IMG/VR virus record: IMGVR_UViG_3300046694_000136 | Location: 62,001 to 126,000 of that record | Length of the DNA: 64,000 bases | Direction: 5' to 3' (one strand) | Shown here: piece by piece, positions 2 through 9,066 of the stretch | Layout: every line of letters begins with the position of its first letter | Position numbering within the stretch: position 1 is the first letter of the stretch | Translations under genes and position numbers: made by a program | The notes under the pieces: generated by a model | What the model was told of the DNA's origin: nothing | The model's input: only the letters and a program-made list of their open reading frames with translations | The model's database searches: none

Positions 2-307
2 GACAACCGGGGTATCATTGGCGATAAGAACGTCTACATCGCTGTAAACCGTGCTATCGGAGCTCAGCTGAAATATCTGGTACGTGGGTTGGGCGGTACT
101 GCTGCTAACAAAGGCAACGGTATCGTCATTACACTGCCGGAAACCATCCCTTACTTCAAGACCCGTGAACAGGAACGTCCGGTTAATGAGGTGAATGCTC
201 TGTTCGTTAAGTCGATCAAGTATCTGTGGGAAGAGAAGTCTACCTGCATTGAGATTGACTCTTCGGAACACTTGTACGTTACCGATGACTTCATGGTGAC
301 CCACAAC
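2..307 (+). mobile_element. C-terminal part of an intein with LAGLIDADG-type endonuclease remnant
   Basis: Block H-like LKYLVRGLGG; blocks F/G STCIEIDSSEHLYVTDDFMVTHN followed by Thr (+1 nucleophile, nt 308-310). Confidence 0.9.
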
Positions 308-2092
308 ACGGTGTCGGTTCAGGTCATTAACTTCTGGCTGACCTACATCATGGGTCGAGGGTATACATCTCACCTCATTACCCTGAAGAGTGATAACCGG
401 GCTCAGTTCGTCAACGCCATTAAGACGATCCGTAGCAGTATTCCTAAGTTCTTGGTTAACTCGACCTATAAGGACAAGGACGCTGGTACATCGTTAACGT
501 ATAAAGCGTTTGGTGAGGATCAGGTTAATACCCTGTACATCAACGTTCCGCAACAAGGGGCTGACGCAGCAGGCGACTTGGCACGTGGTCTGACAGTAGG
601 TTCTGGTTGGTACGACGAATCAGCGTACATCAAGTACATCGACTTGATCATCGACGGTTCTGGTCCTTCCATGCTAACCGAGATGGCTGTATGTCGTTCT
701 AAAGGCCTGCCACACGGGATCAGTCACATCACAACACCGAACACAACGCTGCACCCAAGTGGTCAGTTCATGTTCAAACGTTTGATGGACTCTACCGAAT
801 GGCGAGAGAAGTTCTTTGACTGCTTCAGCGAGTCCGATCTGCATGACAAGCTGATTAAAGCGTCTCCAGTCGAAACCACGTCTCCTAAACTGGCGATGGT
901 GTATAACTACCTCCAGCTGGGTAAAGACAAGGACTGGGTGAAGTGGGTTATCGACGACCTTAACTTGAGTAAAGCTAAGGCCAAGATCGACTTGCTGTTG
1001 ATGTGGGTGGAAGACGGGGAGAACCGGTTGTTTGATGACCAGACCCGTGAAGCCATTAACAACATGAAGCGGGACGTAGTGTGGAGCAAAGAGTACAAGG
1101 ACTTTAACCTTTACATGGACTTCTTTGTTACACAGAACGAACTGGCTGAAATGTGCGCGAAGTCTTACAACGACTTCTTCTTGATCGGTTGCGATACTTC
1201 CTCCGCTATCAACAAGGACGCCTGCACCATCGTAATCCGCAGTATGAAGACTGGTAAGGTCGTTGGGGTAGGTCGATACGCTCTTACCTATCTGGACCAC
1301 GTAGCGAGCATCTTGGTGGACTTGCTGGAATGCATTCAGAACAGTATCCTGATCCCTGAACGCAACTATGCTCACCACATGATCGATACGCTCCTGATCA
1401 CGCTGCCTGCTAAGGGTATGGATCCATTCACCCGGATCTACAACACGGTCTACAACGACACGGTTGGTCACGAGAAGGAGTACGAAGAAGTTAGACGTAC
1501 TGGGTTCGCTACTCGTAGCAAGAACTTCTACCTGAAGTTCAAGCAGCACTTTGGGTTCCTCACCACAGGTACTTCTCGTAAGACACTTTACGGGTTGATC
1601 ATCGAAGCGGTAGGGAACACGGGTTATGGGTTGGCGTACAGCAAGCTTGCGGATGAACTGATTAACCTGCGGCTTAAGGCAGACCGGATTGACCACGACT
1701 CTAAGCAACACGATGACTTGGTTATTTCGTGGCTGTTGAGTTACTGGTTCATTAAGCTGGGGATGAACAAATCGCTATACGGGATTCCTCCTGGACTGGC
1801 ATTGACTGAAACCCGTAACTTGATGAACGAAGCAGCAGGTGTGAAGACTCCAGAAACGGAACCTCACATTATCCACTTGCTCCAGAAAGTCAGAGCGAAG
1901 ATCACTACACTTACGGATGAGTTGTTGTCTACGAACGATAACCTGCTGGCCTTGCGTCTGGAAGCAGAGATTCGGAAGCTGACGAAGTACCTCCCACCTG
2001 AACAAGCACGTTCGATGACGATCGACAAAGTTATCGACGACGCTCGTTTGGATCGGAACAAGCGCATTATGGATCAGCGCAGAGTTGCATAA
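2..2092 (+). CDS. terL: Large terminase subunit (phiKZ gp25-like), 5'-truncated, intein-containing
   Basis: Frame open from nt 2. After the intein: TVSVQV (residue following Walker A GK), Walker B-like GWYDES, coupling motif ITTPN, RNase H nuclease motifs IGCDTS, KDAC, IPERN and HDDLV. Confidence 0.85.
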   Translation, partial: DNRGIIGDKNVYIAVNRAIGAQLKYLVRGLGGTAANKGNGIVITLPETIPYFKTREQERPVNEVNALFVKSIKYLWEEKSTCIEIDSSEHLYVTDDFMVTHNTVSVQVINFWLTYIMGRGYTSHLITLKSDNRAQFVNAIKTIRSSIPKFLVNSTYKDKDAGTSLTYKAFGEDQVNTLYINVPQQGADAAGDLARGLTVGSGWYDESAYIKYIDLIIDGSGPSMLTEMAVCRSKGLPHGISHITTPNTTLHPSGQFMFKRLMDSTEWREKFFDCFSESDLHDKLIKASPVETTSPKLAMVYNYLQLGKDKDWVKWVIDDLNLSKAKAKIDLLLMWVEDGENRLFDDQTREAINNMKRDVVWSKEYKDFNLYMDFFVTQNELAEMCAKSYNDFFLIGCDTSSAINKDACTIVIRSMKTGKVVGVGRYALTYLDHVASILVDLLECIQNSILIPERNYAHHMIDTLLITLPAKGMDPFTRIYNTVYNDTVGHEKEYEEVRRTGFATRSKNFYLKFKQHFGFLTTGTSRKTLYGLIIEAVGNTGYGLAYSKLADELINLRLKADRIDHDSKQHDDLVISWLLSYWFIKLGMNKSLYGIPPGLALTETRNLMNEAAGVKTPETEPHIIHLLQKVRAKITTLTDELLSTNDNLLALRLEAEIRKLTKYLPPEQARSMTIDKVIDDARLDRNKRIMDQRRVA

Positions 2093-2097
2093 ATAAC

Positions 2098-2135
2098 CCT
2101 ACCCTCCAGAGCCCTTGACGGGGCTCTGGAGGTAT
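2098..2135. terminator. Bidirectional intrinsic terminator between convergent genes
   Basis: CCTCCAGAGCCC-TTGACG-GGGCTCTGGAGG inverted repeat. Confidence 0.8.
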
Positions 2136-2148
2136 AGGTGTTTATTTG

Positions 2149-2955
2149 TTACTTGGTGTTGATGTTCAGATACTGAATCATCTCTTCGTACGAACGACCG
2201 GTCAGGCTGGCCAGAGGCTTGGTACCAGCAACACGTTCGTTGAAGGTATAACCCGCCACACTTTCGGAACGGAAGTACTCAGCGTTGATCAGAGCAGCAC
2301 GATCTTTGAGCTGCAAGAGAGTACCGGAGATTGGAGCGGAGTCAAGCTTAGCCACCACGTGGATCAGATGGAGCTTCTTGTTCACCAGCACTTCGGCGAG
2401 ACCCATCATCACGTAACCACCGCCCTCAGCTTTAGAAGCTTCGCTGCGGATGATTGGGATCAGGCCGTCTTCAACATGACCTACTTGATCACGATCTTCG
2501 AAATGATCGACGGTGCAGTTGTAGGACTTCGCGAAGAAAGTCTTCTTCAGGTTGTCGAACTCCATCTCACCGGTCACCAGACGCTTGGCACAGTACTCGG
2601 CCATCTCGCGACTGAGGAAGTAGACCTCACCACCGGAACGGGTAATCTGCGAAGGGATGTTGAGGTCTACCGAGAAGCTGCCACTGAGAGACGTTTTGTG
2701 GATCAAGACCGCAATGGCTGGCCGGCCACCATGACTGTCCAGATAGAAACCGTCCATGATGTAGAAATCGCCGTATTCGGCAGGGGCTTGGTTCTTCAGG
2801 TAGAACAGGCTGACAGTAGGGTTATCAGCTGGACCAAATTCGAACTTACCGGTCATCTTGAGATCGTCGAGAGCTTTAGTGAGACTTTCTTCATTCCCAG
2901 CAGTCGTACCTTTCTTCAGTTCGTTAGCAGAAGAAGTGCGTTGGGCCATGTTCAT
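2149..2955 (-). CDS. Hypothetical protein (possible virion protein)
   Basis: 268 aa ORF, last gene of a reverse-strand operon, AAGGA upstream; AGNE near the N-terminus resembles head processing sites. Confidence 0.7.
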   Translation of the reverse strand: MNMAQRTSSANELKKGTTAGNEESLTKALDDLKMTGKFEFGPADNPTVSLFYLKNQAPAEYGDFYIMDGFYLDSHGGRPAIAVLIHKTSLSGSFSVDLNIPSQITRSGGEVYFLSREMAEYCAKRLVTGEMEFDNLKKTFFAKSYNCTVDHFEDRDQVGHVEDGLIPIIRSEASKAEGGGYVMMGLAEVLVNKKLHLIHVVAKLDSAPISGTLLQLKDRAALINAEYFRSESVAGYTFNERVAGTKPLASLTGRSYEEMIQYLNINTK

Positions 2956-2965
2956 GTTTCTTTCC

Positions 2966-3478
2966 TTACTTGCTTTGAGTCAGTGGAGTGGTAATTGGGA
3001 AAACAGGAAATTCACTGTGTTCCACTTTTTCGAATTGCTTAAAATAATCAATCATCTCTTGCGCTGTACGACAACCGAATTCATTATCGGTCACCGCGGT
3101 AACCAGCACGCCCTTGGCTTGACACGCCAGTACACAGTTGATGGTATCTGCCAGCGACGTGAAGTAGCGCTCGCCCTCGCCACGATGGAGCGTGATACTG
3201 TGCATCCCCTCAATAGGGTAACGGACCTTCATGTTCTCTTTAGGAGTCAGCATGAAGGCTTTGAAACGATGCGGAAATTGACCCGGGTAGGCGGTTTTGT
3301 AAGTCGCCATGGTGAACAGGTACTGATCAAAGTTTACTTCGAGGCCAGGTGGGATAAACACCCGTGGATCACCCGCCAGCGCTTTGGGTACGTTGAACTC
3401 AATATCGAACGAGTCGTAAGGTTGGTAACCCTTAACGATCTCATCGAAAATTTCTGCCATCGGGCTTTGTTGTTCCAT
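2966..3478 (-). CDS. Hypothetical protein
   Basis: 170 aa ORF tightly packed in the reverse operon. Confidence 0.7.
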   Translation of the reverse strand: MEQQSPMAEIFDEIVKGYQPYDSFDIEFNVPKALAGDPRVFIPPGLEVNFDQYLFTMATYKTAYPGQFPHRFKAFMLTPKENMKVRYPIEGMHSITLHRGEGERYFTSLADTINCVLACQAKGVLVTAVTDNEFGCRTAQEMIDYFKQFEKVEHSEFPVFPITTPLTQSK

Positions 3479-3495: not shown

Positions 3496-4203
3496 TTATC
3501 TGAGTTCTTGTGCAATACGGATACCAGTAACCGTCGCTTTCCCTACCGAGTTAACAAGCCCACGGAGATCGTTGAGAAGAGCGCCGGTGAAAACGTCATC
3601 GAGTTCTTCAACAGGGATCACGTTACCGGTAACAATGTTCCGCAAAGCAGTGAGCTTACCGGCCAGGCATTTCGTGATGAGGGAGCAGCGCTGACGATCA
3701 AACGAGGCAACGACCGAAACGCTAAGCAGTGGGTCGTAACCAAGGGCTTTGAATCCGGCGAAGACTTCTTCACCAATGTTCTTCCCGCACCAGGTCTCGG
3801 TATTAAGACCGCTCACCTTGAGCATTCTCATATCCAACAAGACACTGCTGCCTTCTGGCGCCTTGATGAAGGCGGAGGTTGGCATCGCGGTGGTAGCAAC
3901 GTGAGCGTGGTAAATCTTCCCTTCCACCTCAAAGGAAACCATCAGGGCATTTACCCGCATCGCGCTTACGTCGAGCTCGTCCATTACTCCCCACGGACGC
4001 TGGCCAGGAACTTGGCAAAGCGCGAAGTAGTTAGGAATGTCGACAGGTACCGTCAGAAACTGGCTATGGTGACCTTTACGACCGAAAGGATCGCCTTTCG
4101 AGTACTCGACCGCTAACGGCGCAGCCAGAACCGGGGAAACAAAGAACTTTGCAGTGTCGGTATTTTCTTCGTAAACTGGATACGCGCGGGTAATGAATTC
4201 CAT
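3496..4203 (-). CDS. Stand-alone paralog of the central domain of the phiKZ-type major capsid protein
   Basis: Start moved to ATG 4203 (AGGAAAG RBS directly after the upstream stop). Motifs YPVY..KFFVSP, FALCQ, GVMDELD, TTAMPTSAF and VTGIRI resemble the gp120-family middle region as recalled. Confidence 0.55.
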   Translation of the reverse strand: MEFITRAYPVYEENTDTAKFFVSPVLAAPLAVEYSKGDPFGRKGHHSQFLTVPVDIPNYFALCQVPGQRPWGVMDELDVSAMRVNALMVSFEVEGKIYHAHVATTAMPTSAFIKAPEGSSVLLDMRMLKVSGLNTETWCGKNIGEEVFAGFKALGYDPLLSVSVVASFDRQRCSLITKCLAGKLTALRNIVTGNVIPVEELDDVFTGALLNDLRGLVNSVGKATVTGIRIAQELR

Positions 4204-4211
4204 GATCTTTC

Positions 4212-5681
4212 CTATTCGAATAGTTCTTTCGTGATCACACGAATCACCATGTACAGTGACAGAGCAGTCCGTGTGGTTAGGACCCATTGCGGGGTCTTAC
4301 GCCCAGTGATGTCAATTACGATCTTGTCACCCAACTCTCGGATGATTTTAACCTGGTCGTTGTTACTGCGAGAAGCCCCGTACGCACCACGCATCTTAAT
4401 CAATACGTCGTACACGTTACTCCGCTTAATACCATTGGCATGCAAGTATTCAAACATGTGCAAAACAATGGTTTCAGCAAACGTTTTGTAATCGGGGTAC
4501 TTCGGGTTGTTGTACCGCTTAGCAAACTCCTGGATCGAATACTGGAGCATCTCCATACGGACGTTATCCAACACACCCGCAGCGTACTCCATCAGTTCCT
4601 CTTTGAAGAACGAACTCTCTTCAGTAAGGATCCGGTCCAGATAAAGAACATGGGCGGTTACATCTTTCGCCACGCTCTTGATACTTAATTCGTCCTTCAG
4701 TTGAACTTTAGCGGACTCAACTTTTACGATGTTGGTTTTGTTCTTCACATCGTGGAAGACTTTGTTGATGTCGTTAATAGCCCGACGCAACCGGTTCTGG
4801 ATATCACCCACCATGTAGACAATCTTCTTGTCGTTGTCCATCTTGGACCACGCTTCGTAGTGAATTCCCGTCTTAGGGTTGATGATGTACTCAGCACGAG
4901 CCTCGATGAGGGCCTTCCAGCTACCGTAGCGCTTGATGTCGTACTTCAGGCTCAAGCGGTTATAGGTCTCGTATACGACTTCCTTACGAGCTTGGAACGG
5001 ATAGTCATTATGTACGATGCTGGTCAGGCACTTGTAGTGATACATGGAAACCACGTCCACCATAGCCCGGTGTTTCTCATCCGCTTTCAACGTACTCTTG
5101 TTGATACGGAACAAGAGGTAAGGGACGGTCATGTTGAACGCGTCGCCTACGACCGCCCACTCGCTCTTGATCGCGGCGCAAGCGTGCAGGTTTTCCCGCA
5201 GCTCATCTTCATCGCAGTCAAAGATCTCGTTGAACCACTCGTTACGGTCAGCCGTGGTGAAGGTGATCTTCTCCAGACCAAGGTAAGGTGCGCCGAAGAA
5301 CGCCATGTGGTCGTGCATCCCAACTTTACGAGTGATGAAGTTGTAGACGTACTTCTTAAGGGTAAGGGCCCACTTAGAGTTAACCTCCAAGTACTGACCC
5401 ATCTTTTCGAAGACTTGCAGGATGGCGTTGGTGCTTTCGAAGTTTACCCCTTGCAGGAGCGCTTCCATCCCTGCTACATCACTCAGTTCATACTGAGGAG
5501 GTGAAGGCTTGGCGAACTCGTGAGGGTGTCTGTCTTGAAAGAGACCGAGGTATTGATCAGGTACAAAGATCGAGGGTTGCTTGTTCCAGTACTCGTTCTC
5601 AGCTTCCTCAGCCGCTCGATCCGAACTGAGGTCTTCTGGGTTGTACTGAACCGGTACTCGGCTGAAATCTAATTCTGACAT
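4212..5681 (-). CDS. Conserved virion structural protein (phiKZ gp32-like)
   Basis: Start moved to ATG 5681 (TAAGGAGG RBS); acidic N-terminus with a VAGME site; HMAFFG..LG..I.F...DR..WF signature; position near terminase. Confidence 0.6.
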   Translation of the reverse strand: MSELDFSRVPVQYNPEDLSSDRAAEEAENEYWNKQPSIFVPDQYLGLFQDRHPHEFAKPSPPQYELSDVAGMEALLQGVNFESTNAILQVFEKMGQYLEVNSKWALTLKKYVYNFITRKVGMHDHMAFFGAPYLGLEKITFTTADRNEWFNEIFDCDEDELRENLHACAAIKSEWAVVGDAFNMTVPYLLFRINKSTLKADEKHRAMVDVVSMYHYKCLTSIVHNDYPFQARKEVVYETYNRLSLKYDIKRYGSWKALIEARAEYIINPKTGIHYEAWSKMDNDKKIVYMVGDIQNRLRRAINDINKVFHDVKNKTNIVKVESAKVQLKDELSIKSVAKDVTAHVLYLDRILTEESSFFKEELMEYAAGVLDNVRMEMLQYSIQEFAKRYNNPKYPDYKTFAETIVLHMFEYLHANGIKRSNVYDVLIKMRGAYGASRSNNDQVKIIRELGDKIVIDITGRKTPQWVLTTRTALSLYMVIRVITKELFE

Positions 5682-5691
5682 GGGGTCCTCC

Positions 5692-6540
5692 TTATGTTCT
5701 GCGAGCAATGCCCATGCGTTGAGCGTCGTGTACGTTCTGCTTGTCGCTCCAAGTCATGCAAGGAGTCCAAACCTTCAGGAAGTATTCCTTGTAGTTAGTC
5801 CACGCATCCTTGTACTCAGCGATATCGTCTTTGATATCCGAGAGCGCAACACCCATCTTGACAGCGGCTTCGTTAACCGGGCTTTTCAGTTTACGGTACA
5901 AGTACGCTTTAACACCCAGCTCTACCAGCTCAGCGAACTGCAAGTAGTGGTGAGCGTGGATGCTGCTCATCGCTTCGTCGTATTCCATGATGACCTTGGC
6001 ACTCATGTTAAAAGTACCCATGTTGATACCGAAGATCACAAAGACGTTGTTACCCGTCATCTGGCAATCGGTATAGGTCTGCGGCATGGACTTGTTACCG
6101 GCCATGTTGTTAATCATGGAACCCATCATTTCGTTCACAACACCAGAACCACACTCAGCGTCGTTACCCACACCGATGCCCAGCTGACCGATAGCCGAGT
6201 TCATGGAACCGAGGTAGCACTCAGTCACCGAAACAATCTTGGCACCTCGAGTGGTCATCTCAGGAACCTTAACTTCTAGGCAGCCGTTACCGATACTGCG
6301 CATCTCTGAACCACCGAGGTCCAGGTACTCTGTCTTACCACCACCGACCTTACAGTCAGGCAGGATCAACTGGTGGATAATCTTTTCACGGATACCTTGT
6401 TCAATGGTGGTCTCGTTGACCATGTTGTACCAGTTACCGAGTACGTTGGCGTTCTTGTTAGCAAAAGCCAATTCAAAAAGGTACTCACTGATGTCGGAGT
6501 TCAAAACCCGACTGATAGCAAAATCTACTGGGTTACCCAT
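5692..6540 (-). CDS. Conserved phiKZ-like protein, probably virion-associated
   Basis: 282 aa, AAGGA RBS, late-type motif upstream, first gene of the reverse operon. Confidence 0.6.
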   Translation of the reverse strand: MGNPVDFAISRVLNSDISEYLFELAFANKNANVLGNWYNMVNETTIEQGIREKIIHQLILPDCKVGGGKTEYLDLGGSEMRSIGNGCLEVKVPEMTTRGAKIVSVTECYLGSMNSAIGQLGIGVGNDAECGSGVVNEMMGSMINNMAGNKSMPQTYTDCQMTGNNVFVIFGINMGTFNMSAKVIMEYDEAMSSIHAHHYLQFAELVELGVKAYLYRKLKSPVNEAAVKMGVALSDIKDDIAEYKDAWTNYKEYFLKVWTPCMTWSDKQNVHDAQRMGIARRT

Positions 6541-7022: not shown

Positions 7023-7703
7023 ATGACCATTGTTTGTTATGACGGTAAGAAGATGATCGCTGATAGTCTGGCTGCTACAGGGGATATGAAGCTCCCCGGA
7101 GCTTTTCAGAAGATCTATCATCCGCTGGATGATGAGTACTGGGAGATCAACAAAACAAAGGTTATTGCGTTTGGTTTTTCTGGTGCCTTGCCGGCGATTC
7201 CTTATATTCGGGAATTATTGAGTCAAGGGGTTACTTACCGGACGATCATTAAGCCGGATATCGACGTGGTCTTCGAAGCACTGTGCGTACTGGAAACGGG
7301 CGACGCGTACGTACTCAGCACTGAACCAACTCGGGCTAAAGGTCCAAGTGCTCACGAGTTCGTTATGGTTCCGGTACCAGTTCCGGTAGCGGTAGGTAGC
7401 GGTGGTGTGTTTGCCTACGCGGCTATGGGGCCTAAAGATAAGAACCAAGCCGAGAAGGGCGTAGAGGCGGCTAAACGGCTTTGTCCTTTCTGTGGCGGGG
7501 ATAACGTGGTCTGGGAGCTCCCACCTCCTCCAGAAGTCCCGAGCAAGCGTCCAGTATCGGTTCTGCCTGAGCTGGTAAACATTGAAGAGACCTATCCGAT
7601 CAATGGGCTCAACATGGGACAGCTTAAGCACGTGGTTAGTGGGATCGTATCTGATCTGATGAAGAAAGCTGATGAACCAGTGACGGAGGTGAAGAATGGA
7701 TAA
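7023..7703 (+). CDS. Proteasome beta/HslV-like Ntn hydrolase, copy 1
   Basis: M-T1-IVCYDG..ADS, QKI, VGSGG, CPFCGG; Pro-rich linker and C-terminal extension. Confidence 0.75.
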   Translation: MTIVCYDGKKMIADSLAATGDMKLPGAFQKIYHPLDDEYWEINKTKVIAFGFSGALPAIPYIRELLSQGVTYRTIIKPDIDVVFEALCVLETGDAYVLSTEPTRAKGPSAHEFVMVPVPVPVAVGSGGVFAYAAMGPKDKNQAEKGVEAAKRLCPFCGGDNVVWELPPPPEVPSKRPVSVLPELVNIEETYPINGLNMGQLKHVVSGIVSDLMKKADEPVTEVKNG

Positions 7704-7941
7704 TCCGGAAACTATCACGATTACTTTGCCTAAAGGTAAGCTGGATTCCATTGAATCAATTACTACTCGGCCTATCGAGGGATATCCTGGGGTATCTGAA
7801 GTACTGATCAATGGGGAACCCGGTCGTCTGCTGGTCGACCTTTCTCAATTCGAAAACAATGAAAATGATCTGCGACGTCTGTACACCGGTGTCGGGGAAG
7901 GTTTTATCAAGCACCATGTGCGAAAAAATAACAGGAGCTAG
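7696..7941 (+). CDS. Small hypothetical protein within the Ntn cluster
   Basis: 81 aa, GGAGG RBS, overlaps the upstream stop. Confidence 0.7.
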   Translation: MDNPETITITLPKGKLDSIESITTRPIEGYPGVSEVLINGEPGRLLVDLSQFENNENDLRRLYTGVGEGFIKHHVRKNNRS

Positions 7942-7942
7942 T

Positions 7943-8458
7943 ATGACTACTGTAGCTTGGGATGGTAAATTGTTGGTAGCTGACTCACAGTCCACTGTTA
8001 ACGGGCTGGCTACACTTAGTGTCTCTACAAAGATCTTCCTTCCCCCTGAAGGGGTTCTTACTAAATGGACGATCCAAGGAGAGTCGGTCGCGGCAATTGG
8101 TCTAGCGGGTTGTGCCATGGCACAATATACCTTTACGGACATGCTTGCGGAGGGGCTTACCCACCGTAGTCCAGTCCCTAAAGAATCCAGCTCCTTTGCC
8201 GCGTTGGTCATTACCCATACCGGTAAATGCTTCCGGTTTAACTATCGGAAGAAAGATGGCGAGGGTCCAAGCGTCCAATTGAGTTTTTCAAACGGCAAGG
8301 ACGCAATCGGTAGTGGGGGTAGTTTTGCCAATGCTGTGATGAGTATCAATATCGACGCTGGTTTGGCAGTACAGGCGGCTATCAATGTTGATCCTAGCAG
8401 CGGTGGTTCGCTTCAAATCTGGAACTCTGCTGAGCCAGGTGTTATTTCCATTCGTTGA
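7943..8458 (+). CDS. Proteasome beta/HslV-like Ntn hydrolase, copy 2
   Basis: Probable start ATG 7943 (AGGAG RBS): MTTVAWDG..ADS, TKI, IGSGG, DPSSGG. Confidence 0.8.
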   Translation: MTTVAWDGKLLVADSQSTVNGLATLSVSTKIFLPPEGVLTKWTIQGESVAAIGLAGCAMAQYTFTDMLAEGLTHRSPVPKESSSFAALVITHTGKCFRFNYRKKDGEGPSVQLSFSNGKDAIGSGGSFANAVMSINIDAGLAVQAAINVDPSSGGSLQIWNSAEPGVISIR

Positions 8459-8472
8459 GGTTAAGGGTAATT

Positions 8473-9066
8473 ATGACAACAGTAGCGTGGGACGGTAATA
8501 CCTTAGCAGCAGATACTCTTTACGTGGCCGGTACTCGTAAGCTGGGAGGGGATTATGAAAAGATCCTGCTTCCGGAAGATACTCCATGGACAGTTAACGG
8601 TAAACCCATTCTGGCAGTTGGCTTCAGTGGGTCGATTGCGACTATCCCATGCATCAAGAAAGTTCTGGAAGCTGACGCAGTACCCGGGGTTGATCCAGCA
8701 TGTGGAGATTACAGCTTCACGATCTTGTTGGTAACCGATAAGAAAGAAGTTTACTACTGGAACTACGGCTCCACTGCTAAAGGCGAAGTGATTAACGAGC
8801 TCTTCGCTGTGGAAGGTAATCACGCTATTGGTAGCGGCGGGATTTACGGTCTAGGGGTCATGGCCATTAAAGGCGATGCAATCAACGCAGTGAAAGCCGG
8901 TATCAAAATCGATGTCAACAGCGGCGGTTACATTGACGTGTGGTCTTTCGAGACTCCTCGTCTGCTGACACGGATTAACCCCAAGGGCGGTGAAATCATC
9001 TCTGCCAAACAAAACACACCTGCTCCCGAAAAGAGCAAAGCTATCTTATGCGCCGTGAACGGCTGA
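8473..9066 (+). CDS. Proteasome beta/HslV-like Ntn hydrolase, copy 3
   Basis: Probable start ATG 8473: MTTVAWDG..AADT, EKI, IGSGG, DVNSGG. Confidence 0.8.
   Translation: MTTVAWDGNTLAADTLYVAGTRKLGGDYEKILLPEDTPWTVNGKPILAVGFSGSIATIPCIKKVLEADAVPGVDPACGDYSFTILLVTDKKEVYYWNYGSTAKGEVINELFAVEGNHAIGSGGIYGLGVMAIKGDAINAVKAGIKIDVNSGGYIDVWSFETPRLLTRINPKGGEIISAKQNTPAPEKSKAILCAVNG

What the first reader, a model, noticed from the sequence alone, without database searches (positions are those of the whole stretch)
3496..4203. Stand-alone copy of the major capsid protein's central domain
Seen: a 235 aa ORF next to virion genes. From memory, the phiKZ-type MCP middle region runs PVY..KFV..P, LL.ISQ, GVMD..D.LD, T..LP...F..AP, and this ORF follows the same order while lacking the rest of the ~750 aa protein. 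Inference: an excised capsid-surface domain acting as decoration, assembly factor, or decoy for capsid-sensing host immunity.
Basis: partly seen in the sequence, partly recalled or inferred. Interest (0 to 1): 0.62.

Follow-up and report, generated by a model that had tools for sequence, protein, structure and literature searches.

The report
Stand-alone capsid insertion-domain gene in hypervariable cassette
An uncultured nucleus-forming jumbo phage related to Pseudomonas phage EL has a real extra gene that encodes only the surface-exposed insertion domain of its own major capsid protein; related uncultured phages carry it too, in a fast-evolving three-gene cassette, and what it does is still unknown.

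Summary
Window 3496-4203 (minus strand) is a 235-aa gene with its own ribosome-binding site. It matches PhiKZ_MCP (Pfam, 59.5 bits against a cut-off of 27) over profile positions 145-326 of 635 only.

It aligns end to end with residues 205-435 of this phage's own 742-aa capsid protein, which lies outside the window. That stretch corresponds to phiKZ gp120 247-462, the insertion (I) domain on the capsid's outer surface. With an alignment it folds confidently as an autonomous domain (pLDDT 95), and Foldseek matches only the phiKZ and phiKp24 capsid proteins.

It is not a one-off relic:
- At least 12 copies of 224-236 aa with the same boundaries exist in uncultured EL-like phages.
- Ten of the eleven copies in the tree form one clade next to the EL-group capsid I domains.
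- The copies share conserved residues of their own.

The gene heads a cassette (I copy, p170, p268) between a head-gene operon and the terminase gene. Flanking genes are 84-96% identical between these phages, while the I copies are 28-42% identical. In three phages the I copy is fused to p170. No cultured phage has the cassette.

Function is inferred, not shown. A capsid-lattice-binding accessory head module is my favoured reading.

The parts
3496..4203 (-). Gene for the stand-alone MCP insertion-domain copy (235 aa, P0001)
   Evidence: Pfam PF25620 E 2.4e-16, profile 145-326/635. 30% identity to own MCP 205-435, E 3e-35. AF2 pLDDT 95. Foldseek matches only phiKZ and phiKp24 MCP, TM 0.70-0.73.
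4207..4213 (-). AGGAAAG ribosome-binding site, 3 nt upstream of the ATG, overlapping the stop codon of the upstream gene
   Evidence: Read directly from the sequence.
2966..3478 (-). p170 (P0030), second cassette gene. It is fused to the C-terminus of the I copy in three other phages.
   Evidence: Homologues at 42-76% identity in L008, L012 and L014. Fusion proteins of 417-418 aa with a proline-rich linker in L014, L047 and L048. No Pfam, PHROG or Atlas match.
2149..2955 (-). p268 (P0031), third cassette gene
   Evidence: 18 homologue clusters at 42-51% identity, all from uncultured contigs. Syntenic in every cassette seen on a contig that reaches it. No family match. No match in cultured phages.
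2103..2132 (.). Perfect 12-bp hairpin (CCTCCAGAGCCC, loop ttgacg, GGGCTCTGGAGG) between the convergent p268 and terminase genes. Probably a bidirectional terminator that closes the operon.
   Evidence: Read from the sequence. The same stretch matches itself inverted in L008 and L012. The consensus scan did not call it, because no T-run follows.
4212..5708 (-). Conserved upstream flank: EL gp13-like head protein (phrog_2921). The true start is probably near 5669, because homologues are 459-485 aa.
   Evidence: PHROG E 1.5e-147. 74% identity to EL gp13. 84-96% identity in cassette-bearing phages. Annotated 'putative structural head protein' in RisingSun.
5692..6540 (-). DUF7484 head-to-tail adaptor homologue, first gene of the co-directional operon
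   Evidence: Pfam PF24302 E 3.5e-73. PDB sequence matches to Goslar gp233 and PHIKZ042. gp233 is the dodecameric adaptor under the portal.
2..2092 (+). Conserved downstream flank: C-terminal part of the large terminase gene, convergent with the cassette
   Evidence: 92-95% identity to the 1093-1097-aa ORFs at the same position in L017 and L036. The EL gene at this position is annotated as the large terminase subunit.

Best explanation
Shown:
- The ORF is a functional gene that arose by partial duplication of the major capsid protein gene in an ancestor of a subgroup of EL-related nucleus-forming jumbo phages.
- It keeps exactly the insertion (I) domain and folds on its own.
- It is the first gene of a three-gene cassette (I copy, p170, p268). 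The cassette ends a tightly packed operon that begins with the head-to-tail adaptor gene and a gp13-like gene annotated as a head protein in a related phage.
- The cassette diverges many times faster than its flanks, and the drop in similarity is sharp at its edges.
- In some phages the I copy and p170 are one polypeptide.

Inferred:
- In the capsid, the I domain sits on the neighbouring subunit's A/P-domain junction and pairs with another I domain across capsomer borders.
- I propose the free copy uses the same surfaces to bind the capsid protein or the assembling or finished shell.
- It would then act as a capsid-targeting module that brings p170, and perhaps p268, to the head. That makes it an accessory decoration or assembly factor whose variable parts are under diversifying pressure.
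For: Identity and fold:
- Pfam and PHROG matches limited to the middle of the MCP profile.
- Own MCP 205-435 corresponds to phiKZ gp120 247-462, and the I domain is 248-472 in PMC11297242.
- A profile of the family aligns to the I-domain region of solved MCPs: 11bt 242-469, 8bfl 63-288, 8y6v up to 471.
- AF2 with alignment A1 gives pLDDT 95.2 and pTM 0.88.
- Foldseek hits only 8bfl and 8y6v, E about 1e-13, TM 0.70-0.73.

A selected gene family:
- The exhaustive search finds copies of 224-236 aa with the same start and end.
- Ten of the eleven copies in the tree form one clade (support 97/95). With the eleventh copy (L013) and the EL-group MCP I domains they form a larger clade (80/99) in which the branching order is unresolved.
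- All I-domain invariant residues are kept (P9, V10, D38, R42, H45, L62 and others), and the family has conserved residues of its own (F20, Q48, Y59, C63, W71, G144, F151).

Link to p170:
- Fusion proteins in L014, L047 and L048 are kept over 73% divergence, with a proline-rich linker.

Link to the head:
- Gaps of 8-17 nt between the gp13-like gene and each cassette gene, with the gp13-like ORF overlapping the adaptor gene, and a terminal hairpin.
- The operon starts with the adaptor homologue.

Hypervariability:
- gp13-like 84-96% and terminase 92-95% identity, against I copy 28-42%, p170 42-76% and p268 42-68%.
- Contigs of run X8 align to both flanks and stop at 2151 and 4209, exactly the cassette edges.

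The known I-domain contacts come from PMC11297242 and PMC13742148.
Against: - No direct evidence of binding. The complex prediction of mature MCP (119-742) with the I copy scored 0.00, which is no verdict either way.
- In the solved phiKZ and Goslar capsids every I-domain docking site is already filled by MCP itself, so a free site for a copy is not obvious.
- Those virion atlases contain no such protein, but those phages also lack the gene.
- Very fast divergence is unusual for a protein that must fit a conserved lattice. It is more typical of host-interaction or counter-defence genes.
- Copies in L010 and L044 lie among small accessory genes rather than head genes.
- p170 and p268 have no recognisable fold or family, so the proposed cargo role is a guess.
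Confidence: 0.4

Rival explanations
1. Counter-defence or competition factor that does not enter the virion. The free I domain mimics the exposed part of MCP and titrates a host, prophage or satellite protein that binds MCP. That protein could be an MCP-sensing immune receptor or a capsid-assembly hijacker. Alternatively, the copy poisons the capsid assembly of co-infecting relatives.
For: - The cassette diverges extremely fast and is swapped as a unit between highly conserved flanks, which is the pattern of arms-race loci.
- It is clade-restricted and absent from cultured phages.
- There is a tandem duplication in L008.
- Copies sit in small-gene accessory arrays in L010 and L044.
- Bacterial sensors that bind MCP directly are established: CapRel, Avs7 and Dsr1 (papers listed, read).
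Against: - A faithful mimic of an immune trigger would be expected to trigger the sensor, not to silence it.
- The copies are only 30-38% identical to the phage's own MCP I domain, which is poor mimicry of surface epitopes.
- The gene sits in a head-morphogenesis operon, not in an early-gene block.
- No defence system that senses a chimallivirus MCP was identified here.
Confidence: 0.27
2. A neofunctionalised fold. The I-domain scaffold was recruited as a generic binding domain for a target unrelated to the capsid, such as a host envelope or a cytoplasmic component. It works together with p170 and p268 and retains no capsid affinity.
For: - The domain occurs in three architectures: alone, N-terminal to p170, and C-terminal to an unrelated 200-aa region in P0006.
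- It occurs in at least three genomic contexts.
- The C-terminal two thirds are highly variable.
- The family has conserved residues that MCPs do not share.
Against: - Every residue invariant in MCP I domains is also invariant in the copies.
- The conservation profile along the chain parallels that of the MCP I domains. This fits a retained ancestral interaction as well as it fits pure fold maintenance.
- The predominant context is a head operon.
Confidence: 0.23
3. A decaying remnant of a duplicated or recombined capsid gene, with no function.
For: - It covers only a third of the parental gene.
- It is absent from EL and from five complete, more distant relatives.
- It diverges quickly.
Against: - The frame is open, with identical domain boundaries, in at least 12 copies that have diverged to 28-55% identity.
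- The family has conserved residues of its own.
- It has its own ribosome-binding site.
- The fusion with p170 is maintained.
- It is confidently predicted to fold autonomously.
- Against a near-identical strain there are 4 synonymous and 3 non-synonymous changes, dN/dS about 0.23. That is too few changes to carry weight.
Confidence: 0.05
4. A specialised vertex or penton capsid protein, like T4 gp24, which is a full-length paralogue of gp23.
For: It is a paralogue of the MCP encoded in a head operon.
Against: It lacks the N-arm, P domain and A domain that form the HK97 shell, so it cannot be a shell subunit. In phiKZ and Goslar the pentons are made of MCP itself.
Confidence: 0.02

Closest known systems
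Insertion (I) domain of phiKZ-type major capsid proteins (phiKZ gp120 residues 248-472, PDB 8y6v; phiKp24, PDB 8bfl; Pfam PF25620)
   Same: Homologous in sequence and predicted fold over its whole length. All invariant residues are kept, and the N-terminal boundary matches to within a residue or two.
   Different: It is a separate gene without the HK97 shell domains, the propeptide or the I-domain linkers. It evolves several-fold faster and carries conserved residues of its own.
Capsid decoration or cement proteins (for example phiKZ gp35 and gp244, lambda gpD, T4 Soc and Hoc)
   Same: A small accessory protein encoded with the head genes. In the MCP, the I domain itself staples capsomers together at two-fold axes, much as cement proteins do.
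   Different: No evidence that it is in the virion. It is unrelated in sequence to known decoration proteins, and none of them is described as a copy of an MCP domain in the papers searched.
T4 gp24, a capsid-protein paralogue used at vertices
   Same: A paralogue of the MCP retained in the same genome.
   Different: gp24 is a full-length HK97-fold subunit. This protein is a single accessory domain. What is stated about gp24 is my own knowledge.
Hyperplastic internal-protein loci of T4-like phages (a conserved capsid-targeting part plus variable cargo, for example IPI*)
   Same: A hypervariable cassette near the head genes, with a more conserved N-terminal part and a variable remainder, sometimes fused to another domain. 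The comparison rests on my own knowledge of T4.
   Different: There is no short capsid-targeting peptide. The conserved part is a folded domain derived from the MCP. Packaging and proteolytic processing were not tested.

Membership tests
PhiKZ_MCP (Pfam PF25620), i.e. a major capsid protein | Score above the family's gathering threshold | tested here: met
   59.5 bits against a cut-off of 27.
PhiKZ_MCP (Pfam PF25620), i.e. a major capsid protein | Complete HK97 shell core (N-arm, P domain, A domain) spanning the profile | tested here: not met
   Only profile positions 145-326 of 635 are matched. The protein ends before the conserved N.N..NFGYR return linker. The own MCP covers positions 37-635.
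PhiKZ_MCP (Pfam PF25620), i.e. a major capsid protein | N-terminal propeptide removed by the prohead protease | tested here: not met
   The protein starts 8 residues before the PVY motif that opens the I domain. There is no equivalent of MCP residues 1-204.
MCP insertion (I) domain, at domain-level homology | Same fold and boundaries as gp120 248-472 | tested here: met
   Own MCP 205-435 corresponds to gp120 247-462. Foldseek TM 0.70-0.73 to 8y6v and 8bfl, with no other fold at E below 0.03.
Capsid decoration protein | Present in virions, bound to the outer capsid surface | not testable with these tools
   No cultured phage carries the gene. The complex prediction with MCP gave no verdict.
Vertex-type MCP paralogue (T4 gp24-like) | Full-length HK97-fold subunit able to form pentons | tested here: not met
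   Only the I domain is present.
Anti-defence decoy or sponge | Binds and neutralises a host immune protein | not tested
   No candidate host system is known, and the host itself is unknown (rhizosphere metagenomes). Neither PADLOC nor any other defence or anti-defence library was searched for these proteins.

The most novel reading that the evidence does not exclude
The MCP-derived I domain has been turned into a portable capsid-address module. A hypervariable cassette uses it, free or fused, to place rapidly changing partner proteins (p170, p268) on or in the jumbo-phage head. Alternatively it intercepts host or rival factors that grip the capsid protein's exposed domain. Either way this would be a previously undescribed arms-race locus built from a piece of the capsid protein itself. 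It would also be a living intermediate between insertion domains and separate decoration proteins.
Probability: 0.3. Interest if true: 0.75.

Novelty: new variant of a known kind. Interest (0 to 1): 0.58.

Why it matters
Insertion domains of HK97-fold capsid proteins and separately encoded decoration proteins do similar jobs, and their evolutionary relationship is debated. This is a natural case in which an insertion domain exists both inside the capsid protein and as a free, selected gene in the same genome.

Its position in a cassette that changes far faster than the neighbouring head genes, together with its recurrent fusion to an unknown partner, points to a variable head-associated or capsid-mimicking function in nucleus-forming jumbo phages. 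That group is studied intensively for immune evasion and for therapy.

The domain is small and predicted to fold on its own. The family therefore offers a tractable handle for asking what the I domain binds. It could also serve as a tag for displaying or delivering proteins on jumbo-phage capsids.

Tried and rejected
- Single-sequence AF2 of P0001 failed (pLDDT 35). It was replaced by the alignment-based model.
- phmmer of P0001 alone against PDB sequences found nothing. The family profile did find matches.
- Megablast of the locus against cultured phages found nothing.
- The word-based protein search for P0001 found only the protein itself. The exhaustive search was needed to find the family.
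- Complex prediction of mature MCP (119-742, A4) with the I copy (A5) scored 0.00 in two runs and controls were not run. This is no verdict, and I do not use it as evidence for or against binding.
- I tested whether p170 and p268 are further pieces of a split MCP. hhalign probabilities against the MCP profile were 0.2 and 0.1, so the idea is rejected.
- p170 against p268 gave a weak similarity (probability 45%, E 2e-4 over 115 columns), left open.
- The ESM Atlas gave no usable leads for p170 or p268. tblastn of both against cultured phages found no match.
- P0006's N-terminal 200 aa is not a gp13-like fragment.
- The apparent dN/dS of 0.42 for the gp13-like gene against L046 is an artefact. 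My ungapped comparison ran across an indel-rich 5' region.
- The sigma-70 and terminator consensus scan was uninformative for this phage.
- Hits of P0001 to a 3759-aa RTX/cadherin adhesin (P0020) and to a low-complexity protein (P0029) are treated as repeat or composition matches, not homologues.
- Literature searches found no description of stand-alone I-domain genes. That library is incomplete, so this does not prove the family is undescribed.

Full report
**1. The ORF**

The finding's coordinates hold a 235-aa open frame on the minus strand. The ATG is at 4203 and the stop at 3498-3496. An AGGAAAG ribosome-binding site sits 3 nt upstream and overlaps the stop codon of the preceding gene. 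A longer reading from the ATG at 4287 would start inside that preceding gene, and homologues begin at the equivalent of 4203.

The protein (P0001) scores 59.5 bits against Pfam PhiKZ_MCP (cut-off 27), but only over profile positions 145-326 of 635. It scores E 9e-23 against the PHROG 'major head protein', positions 226-420 of 746.

**2. The genome**

The window is bases 62001-126000 of a 234.5-kb IMG/VR virus record with direct terminal repeats. The window encodes:
- PhuZ tubulin,
- the nuclear-shell protein,
- a multisubunit RNA polymerase beta-subunit homologue,
- a divergent family-B DNA polymerase.

This makes it a nucleus-forming jumbo phage. Its nearest cultured relatives are Pseudomonas phage EL and its kin: the gp13-like protein is 74% identical and the MCP 58%. 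Sequencing runs that hold the locus are mostly rhizosphere metagenomes.

The genome has one full-length MCP (P0002, 742 aa), outside the window, covering Pfam profile positions 37-635. A profile of the stand-alone family finds no further convincing copy in the genome.

**3. Which part of the capsid protein it is**

P0001 aligns end to end with own-MCP residues 205-435 (30% identity, E 3e-35). In a multiple alignment these residues correspond to phiKZ gp120 247-462.

The phiKZ capsid structure paper (PMC11297242) defines these gp120 segments:

| Segment | gp120 residues |
|---|---|
| N-arm | 164-204 |
| I-domain linkers | 205-247 and 473-484 |
| I domain | 248-472 |
| P domain | 485-539 and 680-717 |
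| A domain | 540-679 and 718-727 |

The I domain is an extension of the HK97 E-loop on the outer surface. It sits on the A/P/linker junction of the neighbouring subunit and pairs with another I domain across quasi-two-fold axes. The Goslar structure describes the same packing.

A profile of the family aligns to the same region of solved capsid proteins: 11bt 242-469, 8bfl 63-288, and 8y6v up to residue 471.

Folded with a 19-row alignment, P0001 gives a compact, mainly beta model with pLDDT 95.2 and pTM 0.88. Foldseek against the PDB returns only phiKp24 (8bfl) and phiKZ (8y6v) capsid proteins, with E about 1e-13 and TM 0.70-0.73 by the query. Nothing else scores below E 0.03.

**4. A family, not a relic**

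tblastn against 50,697 cultured-phage records hits only full-length MCP genes, one place per record. The exhaustive HMMER search over 1.84 billion representatives gives a different picture. Its best hits are short proteins of 224-236 aa that match P0001 from about residue 5 to the end (P0004, P0007, P0008, P0009, P0011, P0012). Full-length MCPs score lower.

In the alignment:
- all short copies start a few residues before the invariant PVY motif;
- all end with a Q.LK-type C-terminus just before the MCP's conserved N.N..NFGYR linker;
- they share a 2-3-residue deletion relative to MCPs.

[quoted passage not shown] Together with the eleventh copy (L013) and the EL-group MCP I domains they form a larger clade (80/99) in which the branching order is unresolved. 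Bootstrap values are rough.

The copies keep every residue that is invariant in MCP I domains. They also have conserved positions of their own: F20, Q48, F49, Y59, C63, W71, G144 and F151. Open frames with fixed boundaries after divergence to 28-55% identity argue for selection.

Against a near-identical strain (L046) the gene shows 4 synonymous and 3 non-synonymous changes. That is too few to carry weight.

**5. The cassette**

In the window the minus-strand gene order is:
1. DUF7484 adaptor homologue (5692-6540)
2. gp13-like head protein (4212-5708)
3. I copy (3496-4203)
4. p170 (2966-3478)
5. p268 (2149-2955)

The gaps between the gp13-like gene and each cassette gene are 8-17 nt, and the gp13-like ORF overlaps the adaptor gene. 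A perfect 12-bp hairpin at 2103-2132 follows, and then the convergent large terminase gene.

The same arrangement occurs in L008/L009, L012 (same phage as L036/G006), L014, L017, L046, L047 and L048. L013 and L007 show it as far as their short contigs reach. Variants:
- L008 has two tandem I copies, 39% identical to each other.
- L014, L047 and L048 encode a single 417-418-aa protein: I copy, proline-rich linker, then p170. The fusion is kept although the fused proteins have diverged to 73%.

EL has only a 98-aa gene at this site. Five complete but more distant genomes (gp13-like 62-69% identical) have other small ORFs there, and only the full-length MCP matches the I-copy profile.

Copies in L010, L011 and L044 lie in other contexts. 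In P0006 the domain is C-terminal to an unrelated 200-aa region.

**6. Hypervariability**

| Gene | Identity between cassette-bearing phages |
|---|---|
| Adaptor | 82-94% |
| gp13-like | 84-96% |
| Terminase | 92-95% |
| I copy | 28-42% |
| p170 | 42-76% |
| p268 | 42-68% |

At the DNA level, similarity of 77-88% in the flanks collapses inside the cassette. Contigs of a related phage in run X8 align to both flanks and break off at 2151 and 4209, which are exactly the cassette edges.

p268 alone has 18 homologue clusters. None is more than 51% identical to the window's copy.

Along the I copy, conservation peaks at residues 41-80 and 141-160. This parallels the profile of the MCP I domains but at a lower level overall.

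**7. What p170 and p268 are**

Nothing is recognisable for either protein:
- no Pfam or PHROG family;
- no ESM Atlas lead;
- no homologue in cultured phages;
- no relation to the MCP.

The two may be distant paralogues of each other.

**8. Mechanism**

The shown facts are the domain identity, the predicted autonomous fold, family-level selection, membership of a head operon, the physical link to p170, and fast cassette-wide divergence.

From the known contacts of the I domain, I infer that the free copy retains affinity for the capsid protein or lattice. It would then serve as a capsid-addressing accessory module, acting as a decoration or assembly factor that carries p170.

I could not confirm binding. 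The only complex job gave no verdict.

The main rival is a non-virion role in conflict with host defences, satellites or competing phages. The arms-race-like variability supports this rival, and so do the accessory-gene contexts of some copies. A faithful mimic of an immune trigger should set the sensor off rather than block it, which weakens the rival. So does the poor similarity of the copies to the phage's own MCP.

A third reading is that the fold has been re-used for an unrelated target.

The relic and vertex-protein readings are disfavoured by the data in sections 3 and 4.

**9. Novelty**

The domain is known and Pfam already recognises these proteins. In the papers I could search, I found no description of stand-alone I-domain genes, of this cassette, or of its fusion forms. 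I therefore file it as a new variant of a known kind: an MCP-derived accessory gene family.

Noticed in passing
window 7023-9066 (+): Three consecutive genes (226, 215 and 203 aa) each match the HslV-family peptidase PHROG 1040, whereas the EL record shows one such gene (gp15) within the roughly 11-kb stretch examined. This looks like a tandem triplication of a proteasome-like peptidase.
   Followed up: no
window 5370-5669 (-), 5' part of the gp13-like gene: Against a strain that is otherwise 99-100% identical (L046), the first 300 nt or so of the gp13-like gene are full of substitutions and indels. This is a local mosaic patch in a conserved head gene.
   Followed up: partly
L008:2633-4124: Two tandem I-domain copies (230 and 260 aa, 39% identical). 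The second belongs to the same sub-clade as the fused forms.
   Followed up: partly
P0019 (L045:836-1849): A 337-aa metagenomic protein that seems to contain two tandem, shortened I-domain-like units (motifs H/YxxLxLPxxVPNxLxLC twice). It has no Pfam hit and sits on a short contig.
   Followed up: no
P0020 (3759-aa RTX/cadherin/He_PIG adhesin) against P0001 residues 103-172: Six repeats of a bacterial Ig/cadherin-type adhesin match the beta-rich middle of the I copy at E 2e-7. This may be compositional, or it may hint that part of the I domain is Ig-like.
   Followed up: no
window 2966-3478 and 2149-2955: p170 and p268 show a weak profile-profile similarity (hhalign probability 45%, E 2e-4, 115 columns). 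They may be distant paralogues.
   Followed up: partly
G000:C1:203500-203739 (outside the window): A marginal match (E 1.3e-3, 15 bits, one internal TAA) to positions 81-165 of the stand-alone I-domain profile. Probably noise.
   Followed up: no
window 2-2092 (+): The terminase ORF gave no PHROG or Pfam hit at the thresholds used, although it is 92-95% identical to the ORFs of about 1095 aa at the same position in related contigs, where EL has its unusually long (1088-aa) annotated large terminase. The window holds only its C-terminal part.
   Followed up: partly
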